DNA of 64,000 bases from Diplonema japonicum (GCA_964019335.1 OZ025654.1:434001-498000), one strand, 5' to 3'; positions 4,718 to 52,687 are shown, counted from the first letter of the stretch. The notes: a model not told the origin generated them from the sequence alone. Made by a program: numbers and translations.

Positions 4718-4819
4718 AAACTAGTTTGGCGCTTCATTTTGTTTGTGCGCACGAGCGGAATTTTACCTAATAAAATAGCTCATCACGCTGCCATCTACTA
4801 GTTTTTAGTCTCGACAATA
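4718..4819. repeat. Dispersed repeat D (~100 bp, hairpin or MITE-like); copies or fragments at 4718, 17155, 20020, 29471 (inverted), 33715, 54659, 57384, 63820
   Basis: aaactagtttggcgcttcatttgtttgtgcgcacgagcgg...aataaaatagctcat...gctgccatc.actagtttttagtc..gacaata. Confidence 0.85.
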
Positions 4820-28357: not shown

Positions 28358-28534
28358 ATTCTTCTTTGTTTTGTTTTGCTCTTTTTCACTTTTTGAATTA
28401 AAAAGAAGGGAGGGGGCATAATTATTCTTTGTTCCCAAACGTAAATATTAACGTTGTCGCTATCCATGCTGCAAGCATGCCTGAGATTAAAAGAAAGTAA
28501 TCAATGAGACGCCACCCCTTAAATGAGTTAAAGG

Positions 28535-29270
28535 ACGTCTTTGAACAAAAAGAAATCACCTCCACATTCTTGTGAATCACAGGTCTGCCCTCACGAACTC
28601 GTAGGTGATGCTGCCAGTGATGTTGACCTGGGTTCGGAGCATCCTTGTGGTCTGGTGTTGGTAGCCCAAGTTAGAGAAGTGCTGTACCGGGAAGGGGTAG
28701 CGCCTCACACAGCACCACCCGGCGTCCTCGCCCATCCTCTCCACCTCCCACTGGCTGTATGGGTACTTCGTCCCCTTCGTCGTGATGTGGACCTTGGTGT
28801 GTGCCCCTGTGAAGGGCTGTTTTAGCAGGTTCGAGAAGATGTCCTTGAGCAGCTTCCTGTTCGAGGCAACGGAGGCCTCCACCATCCCAGGGAGTTGCGT
28901 CGCCCCTGTGTGCGGGAAGTTGAACACGACGTAGTCCACAGCCCCGGCCACCTCGACCTGTCGGTGAAGTCGGCCCCATTCCTTGCGCACTTGCATCCCT
29001 TGAGGGCCAGCTCGGTAATCGCCACGCCTCCTTCGGGTCCAGCGTGCTCGTCGTGAGTTAACAAGAAATAAAATCAAGTTAGGGGTGACTAAAAAAAACA
29101 CTTTCTTTTAATTCTATAAAACCACTACTTTTCTAAAGCCCTTGAACACTCTTTTGCACCAAACTCAAACCCATCGATATTACAGGGACTCAATGTTGTC
29201 CTTGAAGTACTCCCACAACCCGTTTCATGGCGACGTAGTGAACAGACGTGAACGTTTGCTTCAGGGTGCA
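28535..29270 (-). pseudogene. Deletion-collapsed duplicate of the 35975-50740 locus: DUF2431 domain 3' end, intergenic spacer and fragments of the TUTase-like gene
   Basis: 28583-29056 matches 36016-36512 (with a 16-nt deletion); 29057-29178 matches 48317-48446; 29185-29270 matches pieces of 50611-50738. Confidence 0.85.
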
Positions 29271-36003: not shown

Positions 36004-39000
36004 TCACATTCTTACGTCTGCCCTCACGAACTCGTAGGTGATGCTGCCAGTGATGTTGACCTGGGTTCGGAGCATCCTTGTGGTCTGGTGTTGGTAGCCC
36101 AAGTTAGAGAAGTGCTGTACCGGGAAGGGGTAGCGCCTCACACAGCACCACCCGGCGTCCTCGCCCATCCTCTCCACCTCCCACTGGCTGTATGGGTACT
36201 TCGTCCCCTTCGTCGTGATGTGGACCTTGGTGTGTGCCCCTGTGAAGGGCTGTTTTAGCAGGTTCGAGAAGATGTCCTTGAGCAGCTTCCTGTTCGAGGC
36301 AACGGAGGCCTCCACCATCCCAGGGAGTTGCGTCGCCCCTGTGTGCGGGAAGTTGAACACGACGTAGTCCACAGCCCCGGCCACCTCGACCTGTCGGTGA
36401 ACCGCACGGTTTGTGAAGTCGGCCCCATTCCTTGCGCACTTGCATCCCTTGAGGGCCAGCTCGGTCATCGCCACCGCGTCCTCCTCCTTCGGGTCCAGCG
36501 TGCTCGTCGTGATGTCTATCGGGTTGACCATCTTGCACAGGGCCAGCGAAAAGGAGAAGTTCCCGTCCCCAATAACCAGCACCTTGTCCCCTGGCTGGTA
36601 GGGATGCGTCTCCGACACGGTTCCCGACCCTCCCCCGATGCTGAAGAACGGTCGTGCCTTTGTCGAAAGCCCTTCCGCCACAAACACTTCGTCGTAGTGT
36701 CTCATGTCGAACGCCTTTGACGTCAGCCCCACCAGCACCGCTATCTTCCTCACCTCTGCTGTCCCTGTCTCTACCACAACCTCGACAATCGAGGACGAGG
36801 AAGATTGCTTTCTCACACACACCGTTGCAGAAGGATACCTCCTCCTGGCCTCAGCCACTGCAAGCTTCCTCGCCGCTGCCTCGTCCTCAACCGCCCGCTG
36901 CACGGGGGACGACAACGACGCCACCGCACCCGCCGATGCGTACTTGTCACCGATGAGGGTGGACACCCTCAGGCATTCTGACAGCAGGCCGTTCCTCGTC
37001 CGCAGCAGCTCGGTCACAAGTTTGTACGGGAGGTCAACCACCCTCGACCCCGGGTGGGCCTCGTAGATGTCGCAAGGGGTCGTCACAGCTTCCTCAACAT
37101 CGCACACGAGGAGCCCTCTGTTCGGTGCCACGAAGAGTGTCTTCTCGCTCCACTCATCCAGCACGGGGAGCACCTTCGCCGCCGCCTGCTCCTCCACAGA
37201 CATGTCCTTCCAACGCTTGTTCACCTCCACGAGGACGGAGCGCAGCTCATCTGATACACTCGCACCACTGCCGCTCCCACCACTACCCTGTACGCGCTTC
37301 ACACGCTGCTCCACTGCTTCCTCCTCCGTCACGTTCAGAACCTTCGTGAAGAAGTAGTGCAGCCCTTCGTACACCTCCTCCAACCCGTCCCGCCAGAACA
37401 GCTCCTTGTCAGTCCCCTTCCGCCACTTGTTCGCCAGCTTCGGGTGGTAGACGAGCACCTCCCTGCTCCGACACGCCACTTCTTCCCGCACAACCGTCTC
37501 CCTGTCCATGAAAGCATACAGCAGCCTGCACTTCTGCGACATCTCGTCAATCCTTTCCTCCTCCTTGTCTTCTCCCGCCTTCAGGTCTCGAAGCACCTCC
37601 ATCACGTCGTCTGCGCACGGCCGCCTCACCATCCCGACCGCCTCGAACAAGGCCTCGTTCTTCACCTCCTGCTCCAGTGTCGGGACACACCCCTTCAGCC
37701 CTTCCTCCCGAAGGAACACCTTCGTCACCCGCACCAGCCCGTTGTGCTTCGTCCTCACCAATTTCCCCTTCAATGCCAGTCCCCACCCACAGCGCAGCGT
37801 CGCCACGTATTGGCCCCAGTGCTCGTCTAGATAGCACAGCAAGCAACTGATATCCTTCCCGAGCCCCGCACTCGTCACCCACGGGTCCAGCTCCCCCTGA
37901 ACCACGCGCAGAGACCTCGGTACGCCGATCTCTCCCTTCACGATCGCCACATCCTCCTCCGCGTACTCTTCAGAGACCAGCACCTTGCTGCCCCTCGACC
38001 CCAGCACCTCCATCAGCTTCCTGCCGCAGTACAGGCGGTCCGCACAAGCGTATTCCCCCGCAACCGTCCTCAGCTTCACAGCCCTTCCCAGGATCTCCAA
38101 CACCGTGTCCCTTTCCTCCTTGCTGTGCCTCCTGCTCAGCAGCCTCTGCCGCAGGGAGAGGTACATGTCGAACGAGTTCTCGTCGGAAGTTGCCTTGAGC
38201 TCTGCCATCATTTGCGCCACCAGCTCCTCCGTGGCGTTCAGCTGCATCTCACGCGTGCTCTTCGAGTTCGGTGTTTCGAGCATTCCCAGGTCCTGCACCA
38301 GGAACTGTCGCTCTCCCTTCCCGAGCAGTGAAGCGAAGTCTTTTCTCAGAGACCCCTTACTCTCTCCTTCCAAACACAGCTTGGGTGCCTCTCGAAGCGG
38401 TTCGTCGTCTCCTTTTTCGCCGCCCTTCACCCCACTGCAGCAGGGCCAGATCGCCATCCCTGCAACCGTTCCCATGTTCCTCCCGCTCTCCATGAGGGCG
38501 TGCAACAGCAGCAGGAAGAAGTCTCCACCCTTCTTTGCGTACAGCTGAGGAGTCTTCTCCACCCAGTGGACCACCTTCCCAACGCCCCACTCCTCCATCC
38601 CGAGCCTCCGAAGCACATAAGGAGGGACCGCCTCCATGTTCCTCACGGCCGCCTGCACCCCGTGAAGCTCTTGCAGAAGCAGCCTCATTGCTGTCGTCGT
38701 CGTCGTCGTCATCGTCATCTTCGTCTTCGTCGCCTTCGTTAGCTCCTGCGCGTAGACCACAGAACCCGGTTCCGCAAGGCCGCCCCCAGACACCTCCACG
38801 CACCTCAGCTTCGCCACCTGCGCATACAGCTCCTCAACGAAGGGCACAAAAAAGGGATCGGTCGTCTTCGTTGGAAGGTAGGCTACCGTCGGGACGTCCC
38901 CGAGCCCACTCATCACCTCCGAAGACACCAGCGCCCCGCACACCGCCTCCACCAGGTGCCCACGCAGCTGCACGTTCCAGTCTTCGTTCTCGTGGAACTC

Positions 39001-41110
39001 GCTTCGGTTCGCCGTCAGGAGCAGGTCCATGTTTACAACAAAGGGGAACCCGACGTCCCGAACCGGGAGGTAGTTGTACACCTTGAAGGTCTCAAGGTCC
39101 GAGGAAGCATTCGGGTGGCTCTCCGGAAAGGCAAGAAGGATGCTGCTCGACCCTTGGTGGAGGCGTGTCTCGCTCTTGTGCCCCTTCATCTCGTACCTCT
39201 TGCTGAACACACAGAACCTCTTTGTCAGGAGCACCGTTTTCTTTTGAGTGTCTTCGATCCTCTCTTCCACAGAGCACGTTCGTACTGTATCCTTCTCTGT
39301 TTTCTTTTTGCTTCCTCCTTGATCATTTTCTTCTTCTTCTTCTTCTTCTTCTTCCTTCTTCTTCTTTTTCCTCGCGGGTTCAGTTCCATCGCAAGACCAG
39401 ATTGAGACAACTCCTGTCGCAGCCCTCACTCGAATCTCCTTGATCTTCCTGAAGAACATGAGGCACAACGGGTCGACACAGAGCTCCGTCACCTGTGCCC
39501 CCTCGCACCAGGGGAGCCGGACCGCCGTCGTCATCCTTGACCGTTCCACCCTCTCCACCAAGGCCTTTTCTTCCGCCTCTCCCAGCTGCTTTGGATAGAT
39601 GTAGCCGATGACGTCCTCCTTGTCAAACTTGAATCGGAAGGCGCCGCTGACCACCATCGGCGTGTCGCTCACCCTGAAGACCGACTTGAACCCGATCCCC
39701 TTCTCCCCGATATACCCGAACTTATGCTTCTTCGTGCTCCTCCCGACATCACACAAGGCACGGAAGTTCGCCTCCTCCATCCCCACCTCGTTGCAGAGGA
39801 ACGTCCCCGCCTCCTCTCCGAAGTCCATCTCCACTCGGGGAACCACCGCCTTCCCGTACTGGTTATCGTCGAAGTTTTGAAGCAGCTCAGCGATGAAGTG
39901 GTCGTCTCGCGCCACCGTGTCCCTCGCCAGCAGCGACAGGCTCCGGTTCAGCATCTCGTACGTCCTCAGAAGCGCCCTGTCCGCCTCAGCGTTTCGGTTT
40001 GCTCCGCTCGGCCGCTTCTCTTCCTGCACCTTCGCCAGTATTCTGCGTCCTTCCTCCACTGCTGCTCCCTTTGTTGTTGTTGTTGTTGTTGTTGTTATCG
40101 CTTCTCCACCCGCCACTTCATCTTCTTCTTCCTCCGACTCGCTGCTTTCCGCAGGGAACTCTTCTTCTTCTGCCTCCTCCTCCCCCACGAGTTCTTCCCA
40201 CAGCCTCTTCGCACAAGTGATCTGCTCCAGGTCCAGCTTCCTGGCGGCGTCGAAGGTGTTGGGGCTCGCTCGATGCGGCATCGACCTGTGCATCGCGAAC
40301 AGAACCATGAGCAAGCTCCTCTCACTCGTCGATGAGACCCCCTTCGCAGAGCACACATGCTTCGCCGTCTCGTACAGGTGGTTGTGCAGCCGAGGGGACA
40401 TCGTGTAGATCCACCGCTTGCTGAATCCCCCCGGAATCTCGGGGAGTTCCTCCCTTGTCGATGCCAGGGCCTCCCAGGTCGCTGTCTCGGGGCTGCTGAC
40501 GAGGTCCGCAAGGTACTTGTCCAGGATACAGGCGAACGGGAAGCACCCCTCGTCCGTACTCGGTGCCGTCTTCACGTCGTCCACCTTGCTTGCCAGAAGC
40601 CTGAACATGCTGGTGAACTTAGGGTATGCATGAAGTACCTTAAACTCTACCTTGAACCTCGACCGGATGTCGTCGCGGCTACTCGCGTATATGGACCTCA
40701 GGTACTTCTGAACCCGCTCAGAGACTGTCTTCACCTTTTCTTTTTCCCCTCCTCTTCCTTCTTCCTTCACACAGCAAGAGACCCACTCTGCCCCGAACTG
40801 CACCTGGATCTTGTGTTTTATGATGGAAAGGAGGCTCTCCCGCATGTCGCTCACGCCGTCTCCAGCAGCAGTGTCGACGAGGTGTTTCGCAGCCTCCTCC
40901 AGGTCTCCTCCTTGCCACATAAACCTGTCGAAACCGTTCCACGAGCTGCTGGTCGCTGTGTCCACGTGTGCCTGCTTCCAGTAGCCGTCCAGACACCGCT
41001 CCGCTGTGCACCCCGTTACAAGCAAGCAGGTGACCACTCGCTCACGGAGCACATTCTCCACGCATGTAAACAGATCCGGCGAGCTGTTCCTCAAGAACAC
41101 CACAAGCCTC

Positions 41111-41192
<82 letters not shown>

Positions 41193-44100
41193 GCTGTACA
41201 ACGTCTATCGCATCCTCGAACTCCCTCTGGTGCTTGTAGTTCTTGGCGTCGAGGAAGGCCACTCCTTTGACCTCCGTGTGCAGCTCCCACCGCGCCTCCT
41301 GGACCGTGACGTGGGTCGGGTGCGGGCACGACTCCTCGTCCATCCACCACCTCAGGTACGCTTCCAGGCTCGTCGTTCGCTCCTCAGAGGGGATCTCCAA
41401 ACAGTCCTTCAGAGCAGCCACCACCTCCTCAGCTGCATCATCGACCGATAACGCGTCACACCCCTTCCTCAAGAGAGCCGCCTCCTTCGCCACATAGATC
41501 GCCTCGTTGCTCACCCCGATGCACTCCCCGCGCTCGAGCCCCTTCAGCCTCGTCCGGACCTCTTCGATGAGCCTTCCTTCTCCCCCCGTGTAGTACTTGT
41601 GCTTCTCGAACCTGTTCAAGAGGGGCGGTGGGAAGGTGTTATAGGCATCGTCCTCCGTGCACAGCAGCATCAGCTTCAGGTCCTTGTGAACCTCCGCCTT
41701 CATCCTGGCGTGGCCCACCCCGATGTCGACGTACCTGCGCGCCCCGTAGGTCACGTAGAACTTGTTGAACAGGTCATACATCGATTCATAACAAGCGTTC
41801 GCATTCGTGATGATGAAGGTCTTCCCCGTGTTCAGAAGCGGCTTCATCCGCCTGATCAGGTCCTGCGTGAAGCCCAAGCCCTTGTCCCCAGGAAACCCGC
41901 TCCCGCAGATCACCTCCAGCTCCTCTGCCTTCTCCCCGACGAAGTGCTGCCTCAGGTTCCCCAGCGACCCAGAAATACTGTCGCACACCAGCAGTGGGTA
42001 CCTCGCCTTCTCGGGTTCCTCCAGTGCCTTCAGTGCTGCTTCCGTGCTGTGACGGTACAGCGTGTTTCTCAGAACCTCTTTGGGGTACACCTCATTGTTT
42101 GTTTGGTCTTCTTCATCCTCTTCTTCTTCTTCTTCTTCCTCTTCCTCTTCCTCTCCCTCTTCATCTTCCCCTATTTCTACTTTGAGATAGGGCTGAACGG
42201 CCTTCAAGAAGATGGTATCAACCTCCTCCTGAGGACCAAGAGGGAGGCCAGAAAAGTTCCTGTACACACAGTCCATCACAGAGGGAACGTCAAGCGTCTC
42301 GCTCGCCACCATCCTGTTGACCCCGGAGTAGAAATCTCGTAGAGCATAGAAGGCTCCCTCGGGGAACTCTTTCTTCTGTGACATCACCTCTGTGGTTTTG
42401 CAGAAGGCCTTCGAGATGGCGCCGAGAAGCTTCTTCCCCGTCTGCATGTCCTTCTCACGGCCCTTCTGCCCCAAGAAGTCCAACGCGGTGTCCTCCAGGT
42501 CGGAGGGCGAGGGGAGGGACCTCGTGATGAAGAGACCTCGGTTCATCTTCGCGGGGTCCACCTGCCAGTTCGACATGAGCAGGCACGGACGGTCCTTCGA
42601 GTCGAACCGCTGGTGCAGAACCTTCAGAGGCATCTCCTTGCTCATTTCTGCAAGCCCCACTTCCTCCAACACCACCACCCCGTCCGCTTGCCCATCCACA
42701 GCATCGAAGTGAGACTCCAGGTCAGCCGTTGTTGTGTGTGGTGAGCACTGCAGCACCCGGAGCGTCACCGCGGGGAGTGCCCGGAACAGCGGTGTCCCAG
42801 AACGCTTCCCGCGCATCGCATCCGCCACAATCGCTTTCGCAAGGGACTTGCTCGTCCCAGGAGGCCCGATGATGAAGAGCGGGACCTTGATGCTCACAGC
42901 GATCGCTGTCATGTAGATGTTTTCCCGTAAGGCGTTGTTCATCACCACACCGTCGGGGAGGCAATCCTCCATAGCCTTCGCGAACACCTTTTGAAGCTTT
43001 AAGAAGACATCCTGTATTTCTGAGAACATTATTATCCCATCCAACTCTTCATAGATAAGCTCCCTTTCACCAAGCTTCGATGCATAGACAGTGCACACCG
43101 CACAGATGGCGCACTCGCCTTCGTCTAGGTCTAAAATCAACAACTCGCACAGCTCGTTCAGCTTGTTGTAGACCTTTTCAAAGTAGTTGATGTCTCGGAA
43201 GGATACGAATCTGTAGTCGCTGTACGGTGACAGCTTCATGAATATGTGTGCCTTCGTCACGAGCAACACTGTACGTTGGGGAAGGTGCCTCAGCCTTTGC
43301 TGTATGCACTTCTTCAATGTGGCCTCCTGCATGTCGGGGAACTTGATGTTGAAGTCGTCCCTGGACAGAGAGTGAACCCTGTATACCTTCTCTGCGAGGT
43401 TCGCCTCATCCTTCCCCCCAGCCATCACCTGCAGTCCCATGTGGCGAAAGCGCTCGATCTCCTTCGCCGTGCGCCTGCGGTCGGGGTTGATTGCTCCGAT
43501 GATTCGCATGAACCTAGTATTTCCACTTGTCCTCAAGGACTTCCCGTTCATGCGGTCCTCGAAGAACACTTCTTTGATGAGGTCGACAGCAGGGCTCGTG
43601 TTCATCTCGTCCAAGAACAAGATCGTGGGTTGTCTGTCGACCTGGTACTGATCGTAAGCATCATCCCTGTACTTGCAGATCATCTCCATAATGTAGTCCT
43701 CTGTGTAGCCTCCATGGACAGTCTTGATGTCCAGCCTGTGGCCTCGCATGGCGCACCAAAACTTTACCAGCTCGGTCTTGCCGCACCCAGTCTCACCCTC
43801 AAGGACAAGGGGTATGTTCGCCTCGTACCACATATCGAGCTGCACCGCAAGATTCGCCACCTGTGGAGACCACACGAAGTGGCTGAAGTGGGCTGGCTTT
43901 GCATTGCCCAAGTACTTCTCGTACATTATTTCCTGACGGTGCAGAGCAGCAAAATCGAAGAACACCAGTTCCTCGTCGTTGGGCATGAGCATGTGGCTTG
44001 CAATGGAGAGGGACGATTTCGTTGGGTCCAAGTGCTTTCTTGTGTTCATGAGTTCCATCACCTTCTTAGCCATTGAGAACTGCTGTACTGTGATGTCGCC

Positions 44101-47100
44101 CCCGTTCAACTTGCGGAGACTGGCCCACAGTTTGAAGCACTCATCCTTCATATGGGCTCCCGTGCCAGGGAGAAGGTCACGAACCACTACTTGATGGTGC
44201 ACAGGAACATCACGAGGCAGCGAGGGAGCCTTTCTTTCGTTTATGCGACCAAAAATGTTCTGGACGTGAAGATAGTTCTTCGCCTGAACCTGTATCCAGT
44301 TCACATTCATGATTTTTATGAAGTTCGTCAGATCACGTGTCTCCACGAAGATGTCATCAGGCATGCGGTGCACCACGCCACTTGGCCCCACCACCATTCG
44401 TAGAACAAGCATTTCAAACAACAGCCTGTCAAGGTGCGGGCATTCACACGACGTGTCCCCAACACGGACTATCAGAGGGAGTCTCGATGTGAGAGCTCGT
44501 TTCCACGAGTCAAGCGAAGCGGTCCCGTTCAAAGTGACCATGACCCGAGGTCCCTCGATGCACTTTTTGATATACCTGGTCTTCCCGCCCCCAGGGCATT
44601 CCGAGGTCACCACAATAGCAAGATGACGGACCCACCGGGAAAGCTTCTCTTCATCCACCCTGAGGACCTCTTCAGGTACCTTTTCCTCAACAAGGACACC
44701 ACACCTCTCTCCGAAGAAAAGTACAGAGATGTCCTTGTCTTCCTTTAGCTTCTTCAGACCCGCCATCAACCTCTTCTGACAAGCAGCAGGTGCATCTTGC
44801 AGGTCGCACACAGCATACAGTGTGTTGCTCCGAAGCTCCACTCTGCGGAGAAACCTGTCGACCTCACCCATCCCTGCAGTGTGCTTCCCAGTTAGCAACA
44901 GCATGTTCCAAGCTGTGGGAAAATCCCCAGCCTTTCTGAACACTTCAAGAACTCCGACATAGGTGCTCTCTGTTTCAACAAAGAGCAAAGGGTAGGAGGT
45001 GATCGGGGCCTCGAGTGTTGGAAGCCTGAATACCAATGCGTCTTTAGACTTAAGGGCCTGCAAAGGGTAGTCGTCAAAGAGTACACCATTCGACTCCCCA
45101 TAACGCAGGAGGACCTCAGTTGGCATAGAGGCAAGGACAGGATGCTCGAGCTGCATGGCCCTCAGCTTCTTTGTCCAGCTGTCCCTCGCCTGAATCAGGC
45201 TGTCGGCATAGGTTGTGATAGCATCGGCATTCTGGCAACACCATTCCCTCTGGAGCTCACCCTGGACACACGGGACCCCATCTACTCGGCATTCCACGAA
45301 CACGGCCAGGGCTTTCTCGCTTGCTTCTAAAACGTTCATGCAGTCCCTCGTGGTTGTCTCCCCGTTGTTGAGCCTTGCGTAGTGAGCTGCTGTCACAAAG
45401 TCCTTCCATTTGTGGTGGTGGTACTCCTTCAAACCTACCAACAAGCTGAGGGTCACCACAGGGCCCTTCGCCACAAGGAGCACCTCGCCGTGATGAATGG
45501 CCTTCAGTTCCCGAAGCTGTTTTCCTTCCCCACCCTTCAGGTCACTGATGAGCTGACGGAGTTCGTCCAGATTCTTGAGGATGTTCACATGCGAGGCGGC
45601 GACAGACTTAAAATCTTCACCCCCAATGGTGGTCGCCACCACCTTCGGGTCCTTCGCAAGGCTCAACGTGTACAACACCGGCCGAGCGAGGCGTATGTCC
45701 TGCAGAGCCGACTGCAGCCCCGCATTGTCTGCCGTCTCGTCCAGAGCCACATCAAGAAACCGCACGAACTGCTTGTCTTCTTTTCCACTGTCTCCGAACC
45801 CTTCCTTATCAAGAAGCTCCACCAAAGGACGCAGTTTCATCAGTATGTCGTAGCTCTCTTCATCTGCCTCGTTGATGTGGTTGCATTTGATGTACTGTTC
45901 AGCATTCTCGGCCAGCATAACTAACACGCTCACCCTGAGGTCCTTCATCTCCAGCCATTTTGACATCAGTGCTTTTGCGAATTGGGGAAAGCACTTCCTG
46001 TACAACCTCAGCAAAGGTATCGCATTCAAACTGTGAAGCTTTCCAAGCTCTGCAATGCCTTCCTTCACACCTGCATCCACCACCTTGTCGCAGAGTTGCA
46101 TCATGGTGTCTAGAATGTCTTCGTGGCAGTACGGTATGTATTGTTGGTAGTTGTCAATACAAGCATCGGGGGTAATGCAATCCAACTTCAATGCCGCTAG
46201 AACCGCCTCCAGCTTCTTGCGTATGGTGCCCCAGTTTGCAAGTAATTCGTATACAGTATGGACATTGGTGGTCACAAGCCTCTGCATGATCTTCTTCGCC
46301 TTTAACTCCTTCAGCATCCCAGCTTTCTCCAGAAGCCCCGCCTCCTGCAGTTTCTTGTACTCCCAAAAACTCTCACAAGTCGACTTTCGATTCTTGATCT
46401 TTCTGTCTCGGTGAAAGGTCACAAGGTTCTTCGAGATTTGAGGTGACAACTTAAAGACCGATTCGATGTCCTGATAGCATTGAATCAGTCTTACGCGCTC
46501 ACTGTTCCACACAACTACCTCCGCCATCTTCTGCTCAAGGTCACCGATGTTCAACAACACCTTCCCGCTCATTTCATTGACAATGTTAAGAATAGTGAGG
46601 AACCTGTCCTTCTCCTTTGCCAGTGTACAGACCTCATCAATGTCAAGCTCCCCGATACCGGTTGAATACTTCTTACAAAGCTCACTTGTGAACTCCTTCA
46701 GTTCCTTGATGTCCGTTGTGATCTTCAGCAGCTTGCAGACCTGCAAAGCCTGCATCGTCTCTGGAAGTACCAAGCTGGCTGTTGTCTTCGTTGCCTTCTT
46801 CAGCCCTTGGCCGACAAGATGTATCACCGCGTCTTTATACGGTTCCCAGTCTGCAGCCGTTTTGTTGCTTAGAATGTCCTCGAGACTGGCGACCCTCTTC
46901 ACCAGACCGTTCACGAAGGCTTGGTCCTCAGCCCACGGCGCAGAGCTTAAGTTGAGTGGTGGGATGTCCTTCACGTCGATCTGCATGTTGCTAAATACGA
47001 GGGTTCGCTTGTTGATGTTGAGGTGGTGCAAGCACATGATCTTAGAGGGGTGTCCGTTCTTTACAAGATCTGTGTATTCCTTCAAGATGAAGGTATCTTT

Positions 47101-48264
47101 CGTGGCTAGCTTCGTACAGTTCATGTTCATGACGAGTGTGGCCTGCCACGCAGTGGACTCTGTAGGTGGTACCTTTTTGAACAGTTTTCCAAGCACTTCG
47201 CTTGGTGGTGAATCAGAAGTGCCAGAAGACGTCGACAACAACCGCAGTACCAGTGAGTACCACTCGGCTGGAGCATCTTGCTTTGAGCCACCCATCTTTC
47301 TGATGACTGCAAGTACAAGATCCGGCCGGGGGACGGGAAGGTTGTCCATTTCCATCAGAGGAGCAGGGTGCTTCCACAGGAGGTAGGGAAGCAAACCCTC
47401 ATGCCTTTTCATTGCGGTCTCCAAAACGGCAGGTTTCTTGCTTGCTAAGTCAGCTGCCAACTCAGAGCTGTCACGTTTTTGAATGTGGAGAGCTCTCTGA
47501 AACTGATCATCCGACGGCACCCAGTTTCCCTTTATGCCCGTGATGCGGCGGCTACTTGAGGCGAACAAACCCTCCGCAAGGATGTTGGTCGTGATCTTTG
47601 GGTTGAAGTCGGCCATCGGTTCTCTCCTCTGTGCGACTTCGAGGAACGTTTCCAGCAGCTTGCCTTCCAGCAGAACTGCACCATCTACTTCGTGGAGAGC
47701 GGTGAACCACTCGGTCACATCATTAATGCAGAAAAACCTGCTTAGGATGCAATCCTGCAAGAGAGGGAAATAGGTTTCAGGTGGCGTCCCGGTGAACCTA
47801 AATGTCTGGATAATGTTTTCGAAGGCCTTCTTGATGGGGTTGTTGTCTTGTTTCTTCTTCTCCTCTTGGTGTTTACGTTCAAAAAGGAGCGCACCCGACA
47901 TGTTACCGATCGGTGGTGCATAGAACGTCATGAAGTCAGCGTAGTGCAGCTCTGCCCTGTCCGAGGGGATGCTGAGCTTGCTGCCAGGTTCCGACTTTCC
48001 ATCGTACTCGTACTTCACATGTACTTCACCGGCACGAACGGGAAGCTTGTGAACAATAAATGTATGGTACTCGTTGGACTTCGTGTACACGTACTTCATG
48101 ACCTGCCATTTGGCTTCATCTCCTTGCTCTTCACTTGCTACGCTCACCTTCAGCAGGGAAGACTTAGAAACTATTTCGCAGGGAACAAACACCTTGAAAG
48201 ACATGTTAACTGACACAGCAACCTTTACCTTTGCTTTCATTGGTGGCTTCACTGGCTGGCTCAT
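36004..48264 (-). CDS. Giant fusion protein: RNF213/mysterin-like AAA+ core, Sacsin/NO VEIN-like GHKL ATPase, and BMT5/DUF2431-like SAM methyltransferase domain
   Basis: Start MSQPVKPP at 48264. AAA motifs GETGCGKT (~43780), FLDEMN, GAINP, GPPGTSKS (~42850), LEEVGLAE..PLKVLH, SNWQVDPAKMNRGLF, LRDFYS, PPPLLNRFEKH. GHKL motifs ELLQNFDDN (~39870) and IGEKGIGFKSVF (~39690). MTase motifs VLVIGDGNFSFSLAL (~36560) and VVFNFPHTG (~36350). Confidence 0.88.
41110..41196. repeat. (CAA)n microsatellite encoding poly-Gln within the giant protein
   Basis: Near-pure TTG run on the plus strand; QQQQ... in the translation. Confidence 0.95.
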
Positions 48265-48451
48265 ACTTTCGGTTTTCTTTCTTTCTTTTTTTATGACTGT
48301 AGCGGAGGTGAGGGGGGTTAACAAATAAAATAAAATAAATAAATCAAGCCGGGGTGATTAAGAAACACTTTCTTTTAATGCGGATAAAACCACTACCTTT
48401 CTAAAGCCCTTGAACACTCTTTTGTATCACACTCGAACCCATCGATTAAGG

Positions 48452-48599
48452 TCATCTTCTGTCCCTATCTCTTCTTTCTCTTCTACCACCTCTGTTCCTT
48501 TCTCTGTCTCTGTCTCTCTCTCTCTCTCTGTCTCTGTCTCTGTCCCTGTCTCTGTCCCTATCTCTATCTCTGTACCTGTCCCTGTCTCTTTCCCGGCCT

Positions 48600-48646
<47 letters not shown>

Positions 48647-51600
48647 TCTGTCTCTTTCCCGACCTCTGTCCCTGTCCCTGTCTCTGTCTCTGTCTCTGTC
48701 TCTGTCTCTGTCTCTGTCTCTGTCTCTGTCTCTGTCTCTGTCTCTGTCTCTGTCTCTGTCTCTGTCTCTGTCTCTGTCTCTGTCTCTGTCTCTGTCTCTG
48801 TCTCTATCATTGTCTCTATCTCTGCCTCTGTCCCTATCCCGGTGTCGGTCTCCATCTCTATCATCTTCCCCCCTCTCTCTGCCCGCCATCCAGTCCGTGG
48901 CTTCAGTATCTTCAACAACAAACATCGCGTCGTCATCATCCCCCGGCCTCTGCACCCTCACCGGTTCAGTGTTGGTTCTAGGCTTCTTTGCTTTGCGGAG
49001 CTCTGCTTCGAATTTCTCCTTGTATGTTTTATTGTCCCTGGCCTCCTCCTCTTCCGGCTTCGGGACATACGGGGTAGGGGAAAGCTCCGGGACCTGAGCA
49101 ATGAGGGACAAGTTCGCCTCGTCCGCCGGTTGGCGTCCTTTGAACCTGTGCAGACAGATTTCGTTATAGCGTATGAGCACGTGTAGAGCGAACAGCCTGA
49201 GGAATTCGACTAAGCCAGGGGACAAGGCATCCATGTTCCACAGGGAAGTCCATGGCGAGGAAGGCAAGAGAGTCCTCCCAAGGCTGACAGCGCTCCTGGG
49301 GTCCGATGTAAGTGTGTCATGGAAGGCGACCCACAAAGGGAACACGTCGTCAACATCGATGCCGATGCTTGCGATCACGTCAGCAGGCAGCGCCGCCAGC
49401 ATCTGCCGCACGTCAGGGTCGTTGCCGTCCACGTTGGCCGCCATCCCCTGCGCTGCCATCGTAGCGAGCGTTCCCTCCACCCAGCACACGCTCTGCAGCG
49501 CCCTGAGGAGGAACGGGGTCGGGAATGGCAACGATTTTGACTTGTCGACAAAAAATGCTGCCCACTCTGCAGGAGGGTTCAGCCCGAGGAACTCCTCCAG
49601 GTTGCTCAGCCACATGGTGCACCTGCTACGAGGCGACGGCTTGCCCTTGAGATACAGCCTATCCTGATGGTTCAGAGTTAGTATGATGGTCGAAAGCTCG
49701 GTCCATTTTCCCCCATCCACAGGGTGCTGCTGCAATTCAGTGAATCGAGGAATGGGTTGCGTGAGCAGGGTAGCGATGGGTGTGGGGTCAGGGAGCTCGG
49801 CGCTGGGGAAGACATAAAGCGAGTCGTTGACCTTTGTGAGGAGCTCTTTGATGGGGGGGAGGTAGGAAGGAGCGGTTTCTGGGGCACGGATGAGCTCGTC
49901 AAAGCGGGTGTTCCAGATCTCGTTCAGCTTGTCTTTAGAATCCTCGAAGATCGCCAAGAGGTCCTCGTAGCCAGGCTGGGCAGGTGTTGCGATGGTGGTG
50001 ATGACGTCTCGGAGGTAATGAAGTTCCTGCCAGATGGTGTGCCGCACAGAAGCGGGCCATTCTTCACCGTAGAAGGCTTTGATCTCGAAGTCTGTGGTGA
50101 AAAGATAGGTTTTGAGCATCATCTCCTTGAGGACAGCTTGGATGGCAAAGGTGTCGGACTGCCATAGGTCATCCCACACCCCGCCTGTGAACATCTTCTC
50201 GCCGACCTTTCGCGCTTTGTCCCAAAGGAGGTGCGTGTGGCGGTTGTGCTGTGTGTCTGTCTTGTCGAAGCAAGCCTTCATGAACCGCATCCTTTCGAAC
50301 GGAGAATGCTTCCCCCAATCAATATCATTTATTGCCTGGTACACCTTCGAGTCTATCCGCTCGTTTGGCTCGCCGGCATTGTTGCCACGTCGCACCTTTT
50401 CGCAGTATTCGAAAACAATGCACAGGAACGCAATGTCGAGATCGCGGTCACAGCTGGCGATGTACCGCTTCCATGGCGAATCTCTGCCGAGGCAGAGGTT
50501 CAACATGGTCGTGAGATCCCTGCTCTCCTTGGAGAAGGACCACTCCCTGTCTTTGTAATAGTTCAGGCGGGCCCATAGAGCTTCCCAAGAATCGTCCCAA
50601 ACATGATACGGGGACTCAATGTTCTCCGTGAACCTTTGGATGTCACGTGGCATGACCGAGTACTTGTGGGTCAACGTTCCCACAACCCGTTTCATGGCGA
50701 CGTAGTGAACAGACGTGAACGTTTTCTTCAGGGTGCGGGTTTTCACGTACGTCATTTTCCACAGCGGGAGGAATTTGAAGACCTTTGTACAGTCGTCGAC
50801 GACGACGGGGAGCCCTCCTTCGGGACACCCTGCAGCGAGGTGCGCTTTGATTGACAGAAGTGCTTTGTACCACCCCAACGGGTTACGCTCTTGACTCTCA
50901 ATAATGTTCTCGGGAATGCAGGCTTCTTGAAGCACGTCGATGAAATCGCTTCCATAAAAGAACACATCGTAATAGATATCTGTGTCGCAGTGGAAGACAC
51001 CCAGCTTGCTGTCTGCGTTAATCTGCGTAGGAAGGAACGACCAGATGGCCGGGTTTTTCGACTCGTTTATGCGGAGCTCCGAGTTGAAGACGAAGTTCCA
51101 TCGATCCACGTATGACTTCATCCCGGGGTTGTTGTTAGTCAACAAGTAGTAGCAAAACATCACGTTCCCCTGGTAGTAGTGCTTTCTGGGGAGCGTGACG
51201 TTCCCAGCATGGTTATAGTCCTCATAAGGGTCTTGGATGACCATGTAGCTGAACTTCTTTCTGTTTGAAGCGTCCATGTAGTGCACCCTGTTGTGCGAGG
51301 GTGTGAAGTTCAACGTGTTCGGGGTTAATGGTTCCTCGTGAGGCTCGAACCCGACAGCCAGACGGTTCCAGTGAAACCCACTGTAAAACCTGAAGAACGC
51401 GATGACAAGGTCTCGGACCTTCAACATATCGGGCTCCGAGAGGTTTTGAACCCTTCCGGGAGCGTTGAGAAGGGTGGCGTTTTGGTGCTTGACGTCTTTC
51501 GGGGGGATCATCTTGCAGTTCCCGGTGTGCTGCAGGAAGTACACCACAATGCAAAGGAACGCAAAAGGCGTCAGCCCCTCTTTGTAAGAATCGATGATCA

Positions 51601-52687
51601 TTTTCCCGCACGCCCATCGCTTCGCGATCATGATGAAGGTCAACACAACGTCAGAGTTCTCCGCAGACATTATCACGTCTTTGAACAACGCAGTCGACTG
51701 GCAAAACCCGTGTGTCGTGATGGTGATGTTGTGCTCGGCAAGCTTCTCAGCAACGTACAGGGCCGCAGGGGGGCTTTCGTGATCGTCGTAGGAGTTCTTC
51801 ATGAACACAACAGCTTCCAAAGCCGTTTTGAAGTCCTTGAAGCAAACCTCCATCACATCATCTTCACCCGAAGTAATCTCCTGCCCGAACATCTTCTTCA
51901 ACCTCGGGACCCACTGTTCCATGGCGCTCTTGTCATGGAACCTTACAACGCCGTCTTTCCATGTGTTTTTCTCAGGGAGCTTCATGTAAAACTCTTGATG
52001 TAAACTCCTCGGTGCCATCTCGATGGCTTCAGGTGGGTACACTGCTTTCTTCAAGTGTTTGCACACGAATTCAAGAAGCTCCGTTTCGGCGAAATGCTTC
52101 CCAGTGTAAAACGGAGAGATGCTGATTTCTATGTTTAAATTGCTGCCTTTGGCCGACAGACCCAGGACGGAGCTGCCCACCGATCGCGCGTAGATTCCTT
52201 TGGGGAGTAGTTGTGATACGATTTCCAAGGTGCTGGTCTTTCTTCCTAGATCGACGTGGTCTTCGCGAGAGTTTTGCGAATCGGTGATGAGTTTTGCCCA
52301 GTCTGGAGACAGTGTGGCCGGCTCTGTTTGGCTTTGGTTGCTTTGCATTGCCGACAGGATCTGCCAGCTTCTGAGGTCGCCAAGTTCGTCTTGGTGGCAC
52401 TCCTTCGCGTGATCAAGGTTCTCGCACATGAAAATCTTCAGACAGTATTCACAGTATTTAATGCGGCCTACATGGGTGTCCTTCCACGTCTTCACCCATT
52501 TTTTCAGCTTTTTTATCCTTGGGCCTGCCATGCCGTGCTGTCCTGGCTGTTTTGTGTCTTCCATTTGATGTGTAGTCATCTCTTCCCATCCCTCCCTCTG
52601 CCCCTCCTGCCATCCTGCTTCCTCCTTTTCATGTTCGAAATTCTCAGGACCCCATTCGCTATCGTCCCCTTCCACCCATTCGGACAT
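48452..52687 (-). CDS. TUTase / non-canonical poly(A) polymerase-like protein, catalytic Asp residues lost, with an N-terminal Cys/His motif and a C-terminal Arg-Asp repeat tail
   Basis: VGSSVLGLSAKGSNLNIEI (GS..DxD position reads NxN); AKRWA...GLTPFAFLCIVVYFLQ; LVIAFFRFYSGFHW...IQDPYE..NHAGNV (PAP-associated-like); CEYC...H...H; (DR)n tail. Confidence 0.8.
48455..48870. repeat. Hexamer microsatellite (TCTCTG/TCCCTG)n encoding the Arg-Asp tail
   Basis: Directly visible; produces low-complexity shadow ORFs in other frames. Confidence 0.95.

What the first reader, a model, noticed from the sequence alone, without database searches (positions are those of the whole stretch)
36004..48264. RNF213-like AAA+ motor whose E3-ligase half appears replaced by a Sacsin/NOV ATPase and an RNA methyltransferase domain
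Seen: one uninterrupted ~4090-aa ORF with the mysterin-type AAA motif series (SECPGGGKT, GETGCGKT/FLDEMN, GPPGTSKS/LEEVGLAE..PLKVLH, DPAKMNR, LLNRFEKH), then ELLQNFDDN...IGEKGIGFKSVF, then GDGNFSFS...FNFPH. No RING or RZ finger is visible. Known: animal RNF213 is a pathogen-sensing AAA+ E3 ligase; Sacsin/NOV domains are Hsp90-like GHKL ATPases; DUF2431/BMT5 is an rRNA m3U methyltransferase domain. Inference: a sensor-effector machine whose output is RNA methylation or RNP remodelling rather than ubiquitylation. I do not recognise this architecture from described proteins.
Basis: partly seen in the sequence, partly recalled or inferred. Interest (0 to 1): 0.92.

Follow-up and report, generated by a model that had tools for sequence, protein, structure and literature searches.

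The report
RNF213 motor fused to Tiamat-like methyltransferase
A single 4,086-residue protist gene joins the ATP-driven motor of the animal immune protein RNF213 to a bacterial-type defence ATPase (Tiamat/NO VEIN) that ends in an RNA-methyltransferase-like domain instead of a nuclease; this is a rare, undescribed combination of two immune-type modules.

Summary

- **AAA region:** it is homologous to RNF213 (PDB RNF213 chains, E 1e-81). No dynein or midasin chain appears. AAA1-2 match by profile comparison, and an AAA6-like fold follows.
- **Missing E3 half:** RNF213's hinge, E3 module, RING and RZ finger are not detectable.
- **C-terminal half:** it is more than a "sacsin domain". It is a Tiamat/NO VEIN body (PADLOC TmtA E 1e-53; collinear with Tiamat-like proteins over about 1,000 aa, E 4.5e-88).
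- **Effector swap:** the Tiamat PD-(D/E)xK nuclease is replaced by a BMT5-like SAM methyltransferase (Pfam E 1e-21).
- **Relatives:** the same order of parts occurs in Diplonema papillatum, three unnamed ENA proteins and Cymbomonas. These form their own clade (100/100), apart from RZ-bearing RNF213s.
- **Paralogue:** the same genome also encodes a 5,176-aa RZ-bearing RNF213 paralogue.
- **Selection:** differences from a sister organism are mostly synonymous (19:13).

No paper found describes this architecture. Function (an ATP-gated, conflict-type nucleic-acid methylating machine) is inference, and transcription as one mRNA is not shown.

The scan had flagged this same stretch once more (s1-867255) and other RNF213-like genes of this genome, but not this architecture on other DNA.

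The parts
36004..48264 (-). Whole coding sequence: 4,086 codons plus stop (36004-36006), without introns.
   Evidence: ORF list and translation. It is collinear with Diplonema P0001 and Cymbomonas P0005 from aa 784 to the C-terminus.
48297..48347 (-). Putative trans-splice acceptor: a pyrimidine-rich tract (48301-48347) followed by AG (48297-48298), 33 nt upstream of the ATG.
   Evidence: Read directly from the sequence. The genome carries 217 copies of the kinetoplastid/diplonemid spliced-leader core. Use of this site is inferred, not shown.
45916..48264 (-). N-terminal region, aa 1-783. It is specific to this lineage and no family or fold could be assigned.
   Evidence: No Pfam hit up to E 5. 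No profile match to RNF213. No Atlas hit. It does not align to family members by BLAST.
45064..45915 (-). Pre-AAA region conserved within the family, aa 784-1067.
   Evidence: BLAST alignments to P0001 and P0005 start at aa 784-785. No match to the RNF213 linker or N-arm.
43843..45063 (-). AAA1-AAA2 of the RNF213-type ring, aa 1068-1474. The AAA2 Walker A (CPGGGKT, aa 1223-1229) is conserved in the family.
   Evidence: hhalign of the family against an RNF213 alignment: aa 1068-1321 match Mus RNF213 1762-2084, probability 98.3%, E 1e-14. Walker A alignment.
41593..43842 (-). AAA3-AAA5, aa 1475-2224. AAA3 has Walker A GETGCGKT and Walker B FLDEMN. AAA4 has Walker A GPPGTSKS and Walker B VVLEE. 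The motifs DPAKMNR and LLNRFEKH are present.
   Evidence: PDB RNF213 chains E 1e-81, aligned to mouse 2366-3132. hhalign E 3e-121. Motifs are invariant across the family.
40951..41379 (-). AAA6-like alpha/beta domain, aa 2296-2438, interrupted by a 41-residue poly-Gln run (CAA/CAG repeat at 41111-41197).
   Evidence: The AF2 model segment (pLDDT 60-76) aligns to AAA+ large domains (Cdc6/ORC, RFC, dynein AAA5/6 region) at Z 7-8.7. This is borderline evidence. There is no sequence match to RNF213 here. Repeat located.
39961..40950 (-). Connector, aa 2439-2768. It is helical, has a family-conserved core (about aa 2570-2720) and an acidic low-complexity tail. It sits where RNF213 has its hinge.
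   Evidence: Invariant columns F2575, F2577, P2663, E2696 and G2719. Model pLDDT 58-84 for aa 2573-2693. No match to the RNF213 hinge or E3 module.
38728..39960 (-). Tiamat/NO VEIN-type GHL (Bergerat-fold) ATPase head with its extension, aa 2769-3179. The catalytic Glu2793 and Asn2797 (ELLQNFDD), NEVGM, GEKGIGFKSVF and LPVRDVGFPF..NRSEFHENEDWN are all present.
   Evidence: PADLOC TmtA E 1e-53. NCBIfam sacsin ATP-binding domain E 2e-14. Pfam SACS. VIA Z 12.3 to sacsin SR1 and Z 9-11 to TopoVI-B, MORC2 and MutL N+transducer. Motif conservation.
36925..38631 (-). Tiamat/NOV-type alpha-solenoid body, aa 3212-3780.
   Evidence: hhalign of the family against 24 Tiamat-like proteins (SACS + NOV_C, about 1,500 aa). 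Without the ATPase head, aa 3212-3780 match Tiamat 426-1049, probability 99.1%, E 1e-18. The last part alone (aa 3503-3780) gives probability 97.3%.
36085..36579 (-). BMT5-like class-I SAM methyltransferase domain, aa 3896-4060 (motif I GDGNFSFS, motif FNFPH). It occupies the position of the Tiamat/NOV PD-(D/E)xK nuclease.
   Evidence: Pfam PF10354 E 1.2e-21, profile positions 1-167 of 168. Motifs conserved in the family. The model segment aligns to FtsJ/MRM2/Spb1 and other SAM methyltransferases at Z 8-9.5. No NOV_C hit, and the Tiamat alignment ends at position 1049 of 1555.
28531..29056 (-). Ghost of a second copy: the last ~500 bp of this ORF, with 16-bp and 7-bp deletions, joined directly to a copy of the gene's own 5' flank.
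   Evidence: Own-genome DNA search, 93% identity. Alignments. Doubled contig depth and loose ends at 36016 and 36512 in the read runs.

Best explanation
**What is shown.** One gene without introns, in a euglenozoan genome, encodes a 4,086-aa chimera of three known kinds of module:
1. After a lineage-specific N-terminus comes an RNF213-type ring of six AAA+ modules. AAA2 has a nucleotide-binding loop only. AAA3 and AAA4 have intact Walker A and B motifs.
2. Where RNF213 continues with hinge, E3 module, RING and RZ finger, this protein continues with a Tiamat/NO VEIN-type body: a GHL ATPase head with all ATP-binding and hydrolysis motifs, plus its alpha-solenoid.
3. Where Tiamat/NOV end in a PD-(D/E)xK nuclease, it ends in a BMT5-like SAM-dependent methyltransferase with intact cofactor motifs.

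The arrangement is conserved in at least four lineages and evolves under purifying selection.

**What is inferred.** It works as an ATP-gated sensor-effector of a biological-conflict (immune-type) system.
- The AAA ring acts as a nucleotide-dependent switch and scaffold, as in RNF213.
- The GHL-solenoid part closes on a nucleic acid, as proposed for Tiamat and other GHL clamps.
- The output is base methylation of the captured RNA (or single-stranded nucleic acid) rather than ubiquitylation or cleavage.
- By analogy with yeast Bmt5, the modified position may be N3 of uridine, which blocks base pairing.

The architecture is near certain (above 0.95). The conflict-system, nucleic-acid-methylation mechanism is about even odds.
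For: **Gene and architecture**
- Continuous ORF with all motifs.
- RNF213 homology of AAA3-5 (E 1e-81; E 3e-121) and of AAA1-2 (probability 98%).
- AAA+ fold for aa 2296-2438 (Z 7-8.7).
- TmtA (Tiamat) models E 1e-53.
- Collinear profile alignment to Tiamat-like proteins over aa 2760-3780, E 4.5e-88. It still reaches 99% probability without the ATPase head. Catalytic motifs are aligned.
- GHL fold Z 12.3.
- BMT5-like domain 78 bits against a cut-off of 24.7, with a methyltransferase fold at Z 8-9.5.

**Conservation**
- The same Pfam set and the same order occur in Diplonema P0001, ENA P0002-4 and Cymbomonas P0005/6.
- These form a clade with 100/100 support.
- Walker, GHL and SAM motifs are conserved across them.

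**Selection**
- 19 synonymous against 13 non-synonymous codon differences to a 95-99% identical relative. All differences inside the AAA and GHL cores are synonymous.

**Not a mis-join**
- Three independent studies' contigs match with 0 differences.

**Conflict context**
- RNF213 is an immune E3 ligase (PMC11549300, PMC7311170).
- Tiamat is an antiphage protein whose nuclease is often swapped for other effectors, and NOV knock-down raises virus load (10.64898/2026.09.30.754977 and 10.64898/2026.09.30.755639).
- The family is rare and patchy: 7 proteins among 5.8 billion clusters, and only 3 representatives among 1.84 billion match both the solenoid and the methyltransferase.
- The genome holds several other RNF213-like giants, including an RZ-bearing one.
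- A duplicate of this locus has decayed to a ghost.
- A canonical stand-alone BMT5-like gene exists elsewhere in the genome (176 bits), so housekeeping m3U does not need this protein.
Against: - **No functional data.** None exist for any family member.
- **Transcription not shown.** The only possible RNA run is labelled a guess and belongs to a sister organism.
- **Weak models.** AF2 models are of low confidence (mean pLDDT 43-47). AAA6 and the connector therefore rest on weak evidence.
- **Ambiguous domain function.** The only characterised BMT5-family enzyme is a housekeeping rRNA methyltransferase (PMC3950682). NOV also has developmental roles. The domains alone do not therefore prove an immune role.
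- **Moderate selection signal.** The ratio of non-synonymous to synonymous change is about 0.23. This shows ordinary purifying selection with no arms-race signature.
- **Gene order uninformative.** Neighbouring genes in a polycistronic unit say little about function.
- **A possible frameshift.** In two of three DNA runs, the only contig laid across 36397 lacks 16 bp, as the ghost copy does. Bubble collapse between the two near-identical copies is the likely cause. A strain-level frameshift in the methyltransferase domain is not excluded.
Confidence: 0.5

Rival explanations
1. A housekeeping RNP remodeller. Like midasin/Rea1, the dynein-like AAA ring and the Hsp90-like ATPase would remodel pre-ribosomal (or other) particles, while the BMT5-like domain installs a constitutive m3U in rRNA.
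For: The BMT5-like domain is complete and its motifs are intact. The only characterised member methylates 25S rRNA (PMC3950682). The best structural matches of the domain include ribosome-assembly methyltransferases (MRM2, Spb1). RNF213's nearest structural relative is dynein/midasin-type machinery (PMC7311170). Purifying selection is ordinary.
Against: The family is extremely rare and patchy: four lineages, with no hit in any well-sampled eukaryote group. That is not expected of a core ribosome-biogenesis factor. The genome has a much better-scoring stand-alone BMT5-like gene (176 bits against 84 bits). Both larger modules belong to families tied to immunity. A duplicate was allowed to decay.
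Confidence: 0.2
2. A chromatin- or DNA-directed regulator. As with NOV, MORC and SMCHD1, the GHL clamp would act on DNA in the nucleus, and the methyltransferase would modify DNA or a protein instead of RNA.
For: The GHL head plus transducer-like part aligns with MORC2, SMCHD1, MutL and TopoVI-B (Z 9-11). Tiamat cleaves DNA and NOV is nuclear. Tiamat genes neighbour DNA methyltransferases in bacteria.
Against: The methyltransferase is of the BMT5 family, whose known substrate is RNA (PMC3950682). It has no DNA-methyltransferase motifs or Pfam hits. No DNA-binding or chromatin-reader domain was detected.
Confidence: 0.15
3. A structural or decaying relic. One or more of the enzymatic modules would be an inactive pseudo-enzyme kept as scaffold, or the gene would be on its way to loss, as its duplicate was.
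For: The ghost copy shows the locus can be lost. A 16-bp deletion is seen in contigs of two runs. The GHL motif II is NEVGM rather than DxGxG. One ENA member has FNFLH instead of FNFPH.
Against: 4,086 codons are open. The excess of synonymous differences falls especially in the catalytic cores. Walker A/B, GHL Glu/Asn/GxxGxG and SAM motifs are conserved across lineages as far apart as a green alga and euglenozoans. NE.GF is also the consensus of the active Tiamat-like family.
Confidence: 0.1
4. An artefact: a mis-assembly, or separate neighbouring genes read through as one ORF.
For: Kinetoplastid-type genomes pack same-strand genes closely. The ORF contains long codon repeats where short-read contigs break.
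Against: There is no stop in 12.3 kb. Contigs from three independent studies agree. The same domain order is found in Diplonema, three ENA proteins and two Cymbomonas proteins. Conserved sequence spans the junction regions.
Confidence: 0.03

Closest known systems
RNF213 (mysterin), the animal AAA+/E3 ubiquitin ligase of cell-autonomous immunity
   Same: - Homologous dynein-like AAA core: AAA1-2 by profile comparison, and AAA3-5 at about 31% identity (E 1e-81 to 1e-97).
- Same pattern of sites: AAA2 Walker A only, AAA3 and AAA4 with Walker A and B.
- Same signature motifs (DPAKMNR, LLNRFEKH).
- Giant single polypeptide with a long N-terminal region.
   Different: - No detectable N-arm, hinge, E3 module, RING or RZ finger.
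- The C-terminal half belongs to a different family.
- It forms a separate clade from the RZ-bearing RNF213s of animals, a giant-virus MAG, metagenome contigs and this genome's own paralogue.
Tiamat (TmtA) antiphage protein and its eukaryotic homologue NO VEIN
   Same: GHL ATPase head with the catalytic Glu/Asn and the ATPase extension, followed by the alpha-solenoid. It is collinear with Tiamat-like proteins over about 1,000 residues.
   Different: - It lacks the last ~500 residues of Tiamat (beta-sheet domain and PD-(D/E)xK NOV_C nuclease) and carries a BMT5-like methyltransferase there.
- It lacks the NOV N-terminal motifs and LOTUS domains, and carries an RNF213 AAA ring upstream instead.
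- The Tiamat survey lists swaps to helicase, peptidase, HNH, HET, CDK and LOTUS. It lists neither this methyltransferase swap nor an RNF213 fusion (RNF213 has 0 occurrences).
Bmt5 / BMT5-like (DUF2431, PF10354) methyltransferases
   Same: Full-length domain match with the GxGxFSFS and FNFPH motifs, and a class-I SAM methyltransferase fold.
   Different: Bmt5-type proteins are small stand-alone enzymes. This genome and Diplonema have such genes too. Here the domain is the C-terminal tip of a 4,086-aa machine and is more divergent (84 bits against 176 bits for the stand-alone gene). Its substrate is unknown.
Sacsin
   Same: The ATPase head has the sacsin SR1 fold (Z 12.3, rmsd 3.1 A over 152 residues) and passes the Pfam SACS and NCBIfam sacsin thresholds.
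   Different: There is one ATPase head, not three repeats. There is no J domain and no HEPN domain. By sequence it is much closer to Tiamat/NOV than to sacsin (TmtA E 1e-53 against sacsin chains E 2e-3).

Membership tests
RNF213 (AAA+/E3 ligase) | Dynein-like AAA core with RNF213-specific sequence. [quoted passage not shown] | tested here: met
   PDB RNF213 E 1e-81 with no dynein or midasin hit. hhalign gives AAA1-2 at 98% probability and AAA3-5 at E 3e-121. Walker motifs are conserved.
RNF213 (AAA+/E3 ligase) | Sixth AAA module closing the ring. | tested here: inconclusive
   aa 2296-2438 model as an AAA+ alpha/beta domain at Z 7-8.7. This comes from a low-confidence model, and there is no sequence match to RNF213 AAA6.
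RNF213 (AAA+/E3 ligase) | Hinge plus E3 module with a RING domain. | tested here: not met
   No Pfam RING hit. No profile match of aa 2224-4086 to RNF213 3130-5139. No Cys/His cluster.
RNF213 (AAA+/E3 ligase) | RZ-type zinc finger (PF20173). | tested here: not met
   Absent from the protein and from the locus in a six-frame genome search. That search does find it in paralogues at C24, C25 and C104.
RNF213 (AAA+/E3 ligase) | N-arm/stalk. | tested here: inconclusive
   No sequence or profile similarity for aa 1-1067. The fold was not modelled.
Tiamat / NO VEIN | GHL (Hsp90-like) ATPase head with catalytic Glu and Mg-binding Asn, and the ATPase extension. | tested here: met
   PADLOC TmtA E 1e-53 over aa 2769-3179. 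Fold Z 12.3. E2793/N2797 and the extension motifs are aligned.
Tiamat / NO VEIN | Long alpha-solenoid (DUF3684-type) region after the ATPase. | tested here: met
   hhalign: aa 3212-3780 match Tiamat-like 426-1049, probability 99.1%, E 1e-18. The fold itself was not confirmed because model confidence was low.
Tiamat / NO VEIN | C-terminal PD-(D/E)xK nuclease (NOV_C, PF13020). | tested here: not met
   No NOV_C hit. The profile alignment stops at Tiamat position 1049 of 1555. The protein therefore counts as 'Tiamat-like' with a swapped effector, in the sense used in 10.64898/2026.09.30.754977.
BMT5-like methyltransferase (PF10354) | Full-length domain above the curated cut-off, with SAM motifs. 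| tested here: met
   78 bits against a cut-off of 24.7, profile positions 1-167 of 168. GDGNFSFS and FNFPH are conserved. SAM methyltransferase fold at Z 8-9.5.
BMT5-like methyltransferase (PF10354) | N3-uridine methylation of rRNA. | not testable with these tools
   This needs an enzyme assay and nucleoside mass spectrometry.
Sacsin | Three sacsin repeat regions plus a J domain and a HEPN domain. | tested here: not met
   One SACS/GHL head only. No DnaJ or HEPN hit.
   No midasin or dynein chain appears in the PDB sequence search up to E 1, while RNF213 scores 1e-81.

The most novel reading that the evidence does not exclude
The RNF213-type AAA ring would be an ancient, portable control chassis of eukaryotic cell-autonomous immunity that can drive different effectors. 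This family would define a new effector class: a Tiamat-like nucleic-acid clamp that disables an invader's RNA, or the cell's own translation in an abortive-infection manner, by methylating a base-pairing position (m3U-type) instead of ubiquitylating or cutting. It would directly link two 'ancestral immunity' modules, RNF213 and Tiamat/NOV, in one polypeptide.
Probability: 0.3. Interest if true: 0.9.

Novelty: new variant of a known kind. Interest (0 to 1): 0.72.

Why it matters
RNF213 is usually treated as an animal (mainly vertebrate) E3 ligase whose huge AAA core has an unclear job. This protein is a natural experiment: the same core is kept, with the same pattern of active and inactive ATP sites, while the whole ubiquitin-ligase half is exchanged.

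That argues that the AAA ring is a self-standing regulatory module that can be coupled to unrelated outputs. It also offers a second system in which to ask what the ring senses.

The replacement matters too. It is a Tiamat/NO VEIN body, a family only just recognised (October 2026 preprints) as conserved from phage defence to plant antiviral responses. Its mechanism and effector swapping are open questions. A methyltransferase in the nuclease position is a swap not listed in that survey.

The fusion predicts a functional link between RNF213-type and Tiamat-type machinery that can be tested in Diplonema papillatum.

It also corrects a database label. The Diplonema orthologue is annotated 'putative E3 ubiquitin-protein ligase', although no E3 element is detectable in it.

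Tried and rejected
- **Dynein or midasin instead of RNF213:** rejected.
- **Hidden E3, RING or RZ:** rejected by the Pfam scan, profile-profile comparison against an RNF213 alignment, a Cys/His scan and a six-frame RZ search.
- **Mis-join:** rejected.
- **True sacsin:** rejected. There is a single head with no J or HEPN domain, and it is far closer to TmtA.
- **Stand-alone 'sacsin + BMT5' proteins as a source of the C-terminal half:** none found among 1.84 billion representatives. The long multi-stretch hits are Cuscuta arrays of BMT5 domains.
- **More family members in giant-virus and metagenome contigs:** only RZ-bearing relatives of the AAA core turned up, and none carries the Tiamat or BMT5 part.
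- **N-terminal 1,068 aa:** no Pfam hit, no RNF213 profile match and no Atlas hit.
- **Structure prediction of aa 2224-3330 and 3280-4086:** a 7-row alignment gave poor models (pLDDT 47 and 43). Only the GHL head, one AAA-like domain and the methyltransferase could be used.
- **PDB sequence search with the methyltransferase domain:** nothing.
- **Localisation of the Diplonema orthologue in the subcellular proteome paper:** not found in the supplements held.
- **Naming the organism through a neighbouring amidase:** uninformative, best hit 48% identity.

Full report
**Observation**

The window holds an open frame on the minus strand from 48324 down to the stop at 36004-36006. From the first ATG at 48264 it encodes 4,086 residues without a stop.

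All thirteen large ORFs of the window lie on the same strand. The genome (62.5 Mb, 132 contigs) contains 217 copies of the kinetoplastid/diplonemid spliced-leader core against 0 for the reversed control. The host is therefore a euglenozoan with polycistronic, trans-spliced genes. A pyrimidine tract followed by AG lies 33 nt upstream of the ATG, which fits a trans-splice acceptor.

**The AAA part is RNF213-type**

A sequence search of all PDB chains returns only RNF213 entries (6tax, 7oik, 8s24 and others). They score E about 1e-81 and align aa 1475-2223 to mouse residues 2366-3132. No dynein or midasin chain appears up to E 1. By the published borders (AAA core 1775-3405, hinge 3406-3588, E3 module 3589-4926; PMC7311170), this stretch is AAA3 to AAA5.

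Profile-profile comparison of the family alignment with an alignment of nine animal RNF213s adds AAA1-2: aa 1068-1321 match residues 1762-2084 at 98% probability. It also confirms AAA3-5 (E 3e-121).

The pattern of sites is that of RNF213. AAA2 has a conserved Walker A loop only. AAA3 and AAA4 have Walker A and B, invariant across the family.

A further alpha/beta domain at aa 2296-2438, interrupted by a 41-residue poly-Gln run, aligns with AAA+ large domains at Z 7-8.7. The model has only moderate confidence there. I read it as AAA6 but count this as weak evidence.

**RNF213 homology ends there**

Neither BLAST nor profile comparison finds any similarity of aa 1-780 or aa 2224-4086 to the N-arm, hinge, E3 module or C-terminal domain of RNF213.

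- There is no Pfam RING or RZ hit.
- There is no Cys/His cluster.
- A six-frame search of the whole genome with the RZ-finger model finds three loci, none of them this one.

**The C-terminal half is a Tiamat/NO VEIN body with a swapped effector**

Pfam SACS and the NCBIfam sacsin ATP-binding model pass their cut-offs. The much stronger matches are the PADLOC models of TmtA, the antiphage protein Tiamat (E 1e-53 over aa 2769-3179), and NO VEIN proteins of animals and plants.

Structure comparison places aa 2783-2958 on the sacsin SR1/Hsp90 N-domain fold (Z 12.3). It places aa 2783-3150 on the ATPase-plus-transducer unit of TopoVI-B, MORC2, SMCHD1 and MutL (Z 9-11).

An exhaustive phmmer search with aa 2900-4086 showed that aa 3010-3280 also match about 1,500-aa proteins that carry SACS plus NOV_C. 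I aligned 24 of these and compared them with the family profile.

- The alignment is collinear from aa 2760 to 3780 with Tiamat-like positions 24-1049 (E 4.5e-88).
- It survives removal of the ATPase head: aa 3212-3780 match 426-1049 at 99% probability.
- The last part alone (aa 3503-3780) gives 97%.

The catalytic Glu/Asn box, the NE.GF box, GEKGIGFKSVF and the ATPase-extension motifs all align. The 'unknown middle' is therefore the Tiamat/NOV solenoid.

The last ~500 residues of Tiamat, including the PD-(D/E)xK NOV_C nuclease, have no counterpart. After a ~115-residue linker comes a complete BMT5-like domain (aa 3896-4060, 78 bits against a cut-off of 24.7, profile 1-167 of 168). Its GxGxFSFS and FNFPH motifs are conserved, and its model aligns almost exclusively with SAM methyltransferases, FtsJ/MRM2/Spb1 first (Z 8-9.5).

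**Conservation and rarity**

A search restricted to the AAA core found seven proteins with the same Pfam set (AAA + SACS + BMT5-like):

- Diplonema papillatum KAJ9466027.1 (4,793 aa, annotated 'putative E3 ubiquitin-protein ligase') and a second, shorter Diplonema papillatum entry from EukProt (P0007, 3,258 aa)
- three unnamed ENA proteins (3,289-3,623 aa)
- two Cymbomonas tetramitiformis proteins (4,160 and 4,338 aa)

Diplonema and Cymbomonas proteins align with the query from aa ~784 to the C-terminus in the same order. No closer relative and no self-hit is in the database.

In a maximum-likelihood tree of AAA3-5, seven proteins of this architecture (this one, Diplonema P0001, the three ENA and the two Cymbomonas proteins) form a clade with 100/100 support. 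A long branch separates them from RZ-bearing RNF213s. The query branches outside Diplonema plus ENA, and Cymbomonas is the outermost. The own-genome paralogue has a very long branch, so its exact place is unsure.

Among 1.84 billion cluster representatives, only three (all family members) match both the solenoid and the methyltransferase. No stand-alone 'sacsin + BMT5' protein exists there.

Relatives of the AAA core in a giant-virus MAG (4,427-aa ORF) and in metagenome contigs all carry RZ fingers. None has the Tiamat or BMT5 part.

**The gene is real and maintained**

Contigs of the same organism from three independent studies cover 36004-42000 with no differences and break only at codon repeats. 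A run of a sister organism (95-99% identical; labelled RNA only as a guess) holds pieces of the AAA end, the GHL head, the solenoid and the methyltransferase. Its differences are 19 synonymous against 13 non-synonymous codons, all synonymous inside the AAA and GHL cores, plus one in-frame 3-bp deletion. I estimate the ratio of non-synonymous to synonymous change at about 0.23.

**Genomic context**

The same genome encodes a 5,176-aa RNF213-like protein (C25:89827-105453). It has GECGCGKT and GKPGSSKT loops and a Pfam RZ finger (E 2e-17) but no RING hit. This agrees with the earlier first-reader note s1-865595, whose length fits exactly.

Further giant ORFs give weaker AAA matches. The genome also holds NOV-like ORFs, sacsin-like ORFs and stand-alone BMT5-like genes, one of which scores far better than the fused domain. 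All three 'parents' therefore coexist with the chimera.

A 0.5-kb ghost at 28531-29056 is the 3' end of a second copy of this ORF, joined directly to a copy of its own 5' flank. It explains the doubled depth and the loose ends in the runs. A tandem duplicate of the locus was evidently made and then deleted.

**Literature**

No paper in the library combines RNF213 with sacsin and methyltransferase in this sense, or RNF213 with euglenozoans. Two preprints of October 2026 establish Tiamat as an ATPase-DNase whose nuclease is often replaced by other effectors. They establish NO VEIN as its plant homologue with a role in virus interactions. Their catalogue of swaps (helicases, HNH, Schlafen-peptidase, HET, CDK, LOTUS, S1) contains no methyltransferase in the nuclease position and never mentions RNF213. 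Yeast Bmt5 makes m3U2634 in 25S rRNA (PMC3950682).

**Mechanism (inference)**

The most economical reading is a sensor-effector machine of a conflict system.

- The RNF213-type ring serves as an ATP-dependent switch or scaffold.
- The Tiamat-like GHL-solenoid unit binds a nucleic acid.
- The methyltransferase, in the effector position, modifies the bound nucleic acid.

Points in favour:
- Both large modules come from immune-linked families.
- Effector swapping is typical of such systems.
- The family is rare and patchy.
- RNF213-like genes are expanded in this genome.
- A separate stand-alone BMT5-like gene scoring far above the fused domain, a candidate housekeeping enzyme, exists.

Points against:
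- There are no functional data at all.
- Purifying selection is ordinary, with no arms-race signature.
- BMT5 has a housekeeping precedent.
- NOV has developmental roles.

I put this reading at about even odds. The rivals are a ribosome/RNP-remodelling role (0.2), a chromatin/DNA role (0.15), a partly inactive relic (0.1) and an artefact (0.03).

**Open points**

- Transcription as one mRNA is not shown.
- In two of the three DNA runs, the only contig laid over 36397 lacks 16 bp, as the ghost does. Contig builders collapse near-identical copies, so this is probably the ghost's allele, but raw reads are needed.
- The N-terminal 1,067 residues and the connector aa 2439-2768 remain without assignment.

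**Verdict**

The protein is not an RNF213 E3 ligase and not a Tiamat/NOV nuclease. It is a new, conserved variant that joins the motor of the first to the body of the second and ends in a BMT5-like methyltransferase.

Noticed in passing
window 28531-29056 (flank to about 29200): Ghost of a second copy of this gene. The last ~500 bp of the ORF (with 16-bp and 7-bp deletions and a changed stop region) are joined directly to a copy of the gene's own 5' intergenic flank (48300-48455). Nearly the whole 11.8-kb coding sequence has been deleted from a duplicate.
   Followed up: yes
G000:C25:89827-105453 (loci L028, L032, L033): A second RNF213-like giant ORF (5,176 aa from the first Met). It has GECGCGKT at aa 2603, GKPGSSKT at aa 2924 and a Pfam RZ-type zinc finger (E 2e-17), but no RING hit. 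The canonical RZ-bearing type thus coexists with the Tiamat/BMT5 variant.
   Followed up: partly
G000: C60 (5,912-aa ORF), C16 (5,142), C18 (5,551), C104 (2,606, weak RZ hit), C69 (2,599), C24 (RZ hit in a 660-aa frame): More giant intron-less ORFs give weak matches to the AAA4-AAA5 region, and there are two more RZ-finger loci. RNF213-like genes seem expanded in this genome. The C-terminal 1,752 aa of the C18 ORF have no Pfam hit.
   Followed up: partly
G000, 217 places, many within a few kb of contig ends: The spliced-leader core CAGTTTCTGTACTTTATTG is dispersed over most contigs rather than confined to one tandem array. Many copies lie near contig ends.
   Followed up: no
window 36397 (16 bp) in runs X2 and X6: In two of three DNA runs, the only contig laid across this place lacks 16 bp, as the ghost copy does. 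Either contig building collapsed the two copies, or some strains carry a frameshift in the methyltransferase domain.
   Followed up: no
L034:876-14159 (IMG/VR GVMAG-S-1016713-135): A giant-virus metagenome-assembled genome encodes a 4,427-aa RNF213-like protein with an RZ finger. It is 29-33% identical to this protein's AAA3-5.
   Followed up: partly
L035:4631-17584, L037:4436-15898, L039:717-19078: Metagenome contigs (one from compost, 129 kb) hold 3,800-4,300-aa RNF213-like ORFs with RZ fingers. One contig has a pair of ~3,000-aa ORFs with VWA and AAA domains.
   Followed up: partly
protein P0001 (Diplonema papillatum KAJ9466027.1): It is annotated 'putative E3 ubiquitin-protein ligase', but Pfam finds only AAA, SACS and BMT5-like domains and no RING or RZ. 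The name is probably carried over from RNF213 and is misleading.
   Followed up: partly
window 48452-52687 (minus strand): The upstream neighbour (1,411 aa) has only a PAP_assoc (Cid1-type) Pfam hit.
   Followed up: no
window 41111-41197, 42110-42169, 39328-39370, 38693-38739, 40071-40096: Long in-frame codon repeats lie inside the ORF: 41 Gln, acidic runs and a Thr run. Short-read contigs of all strains break at three of them (39328-39370, 40071-40096, 41111-41197) and reads seem cut at a fourth (38693-38739), so their lengths may vary between strains.
   Followed up: no
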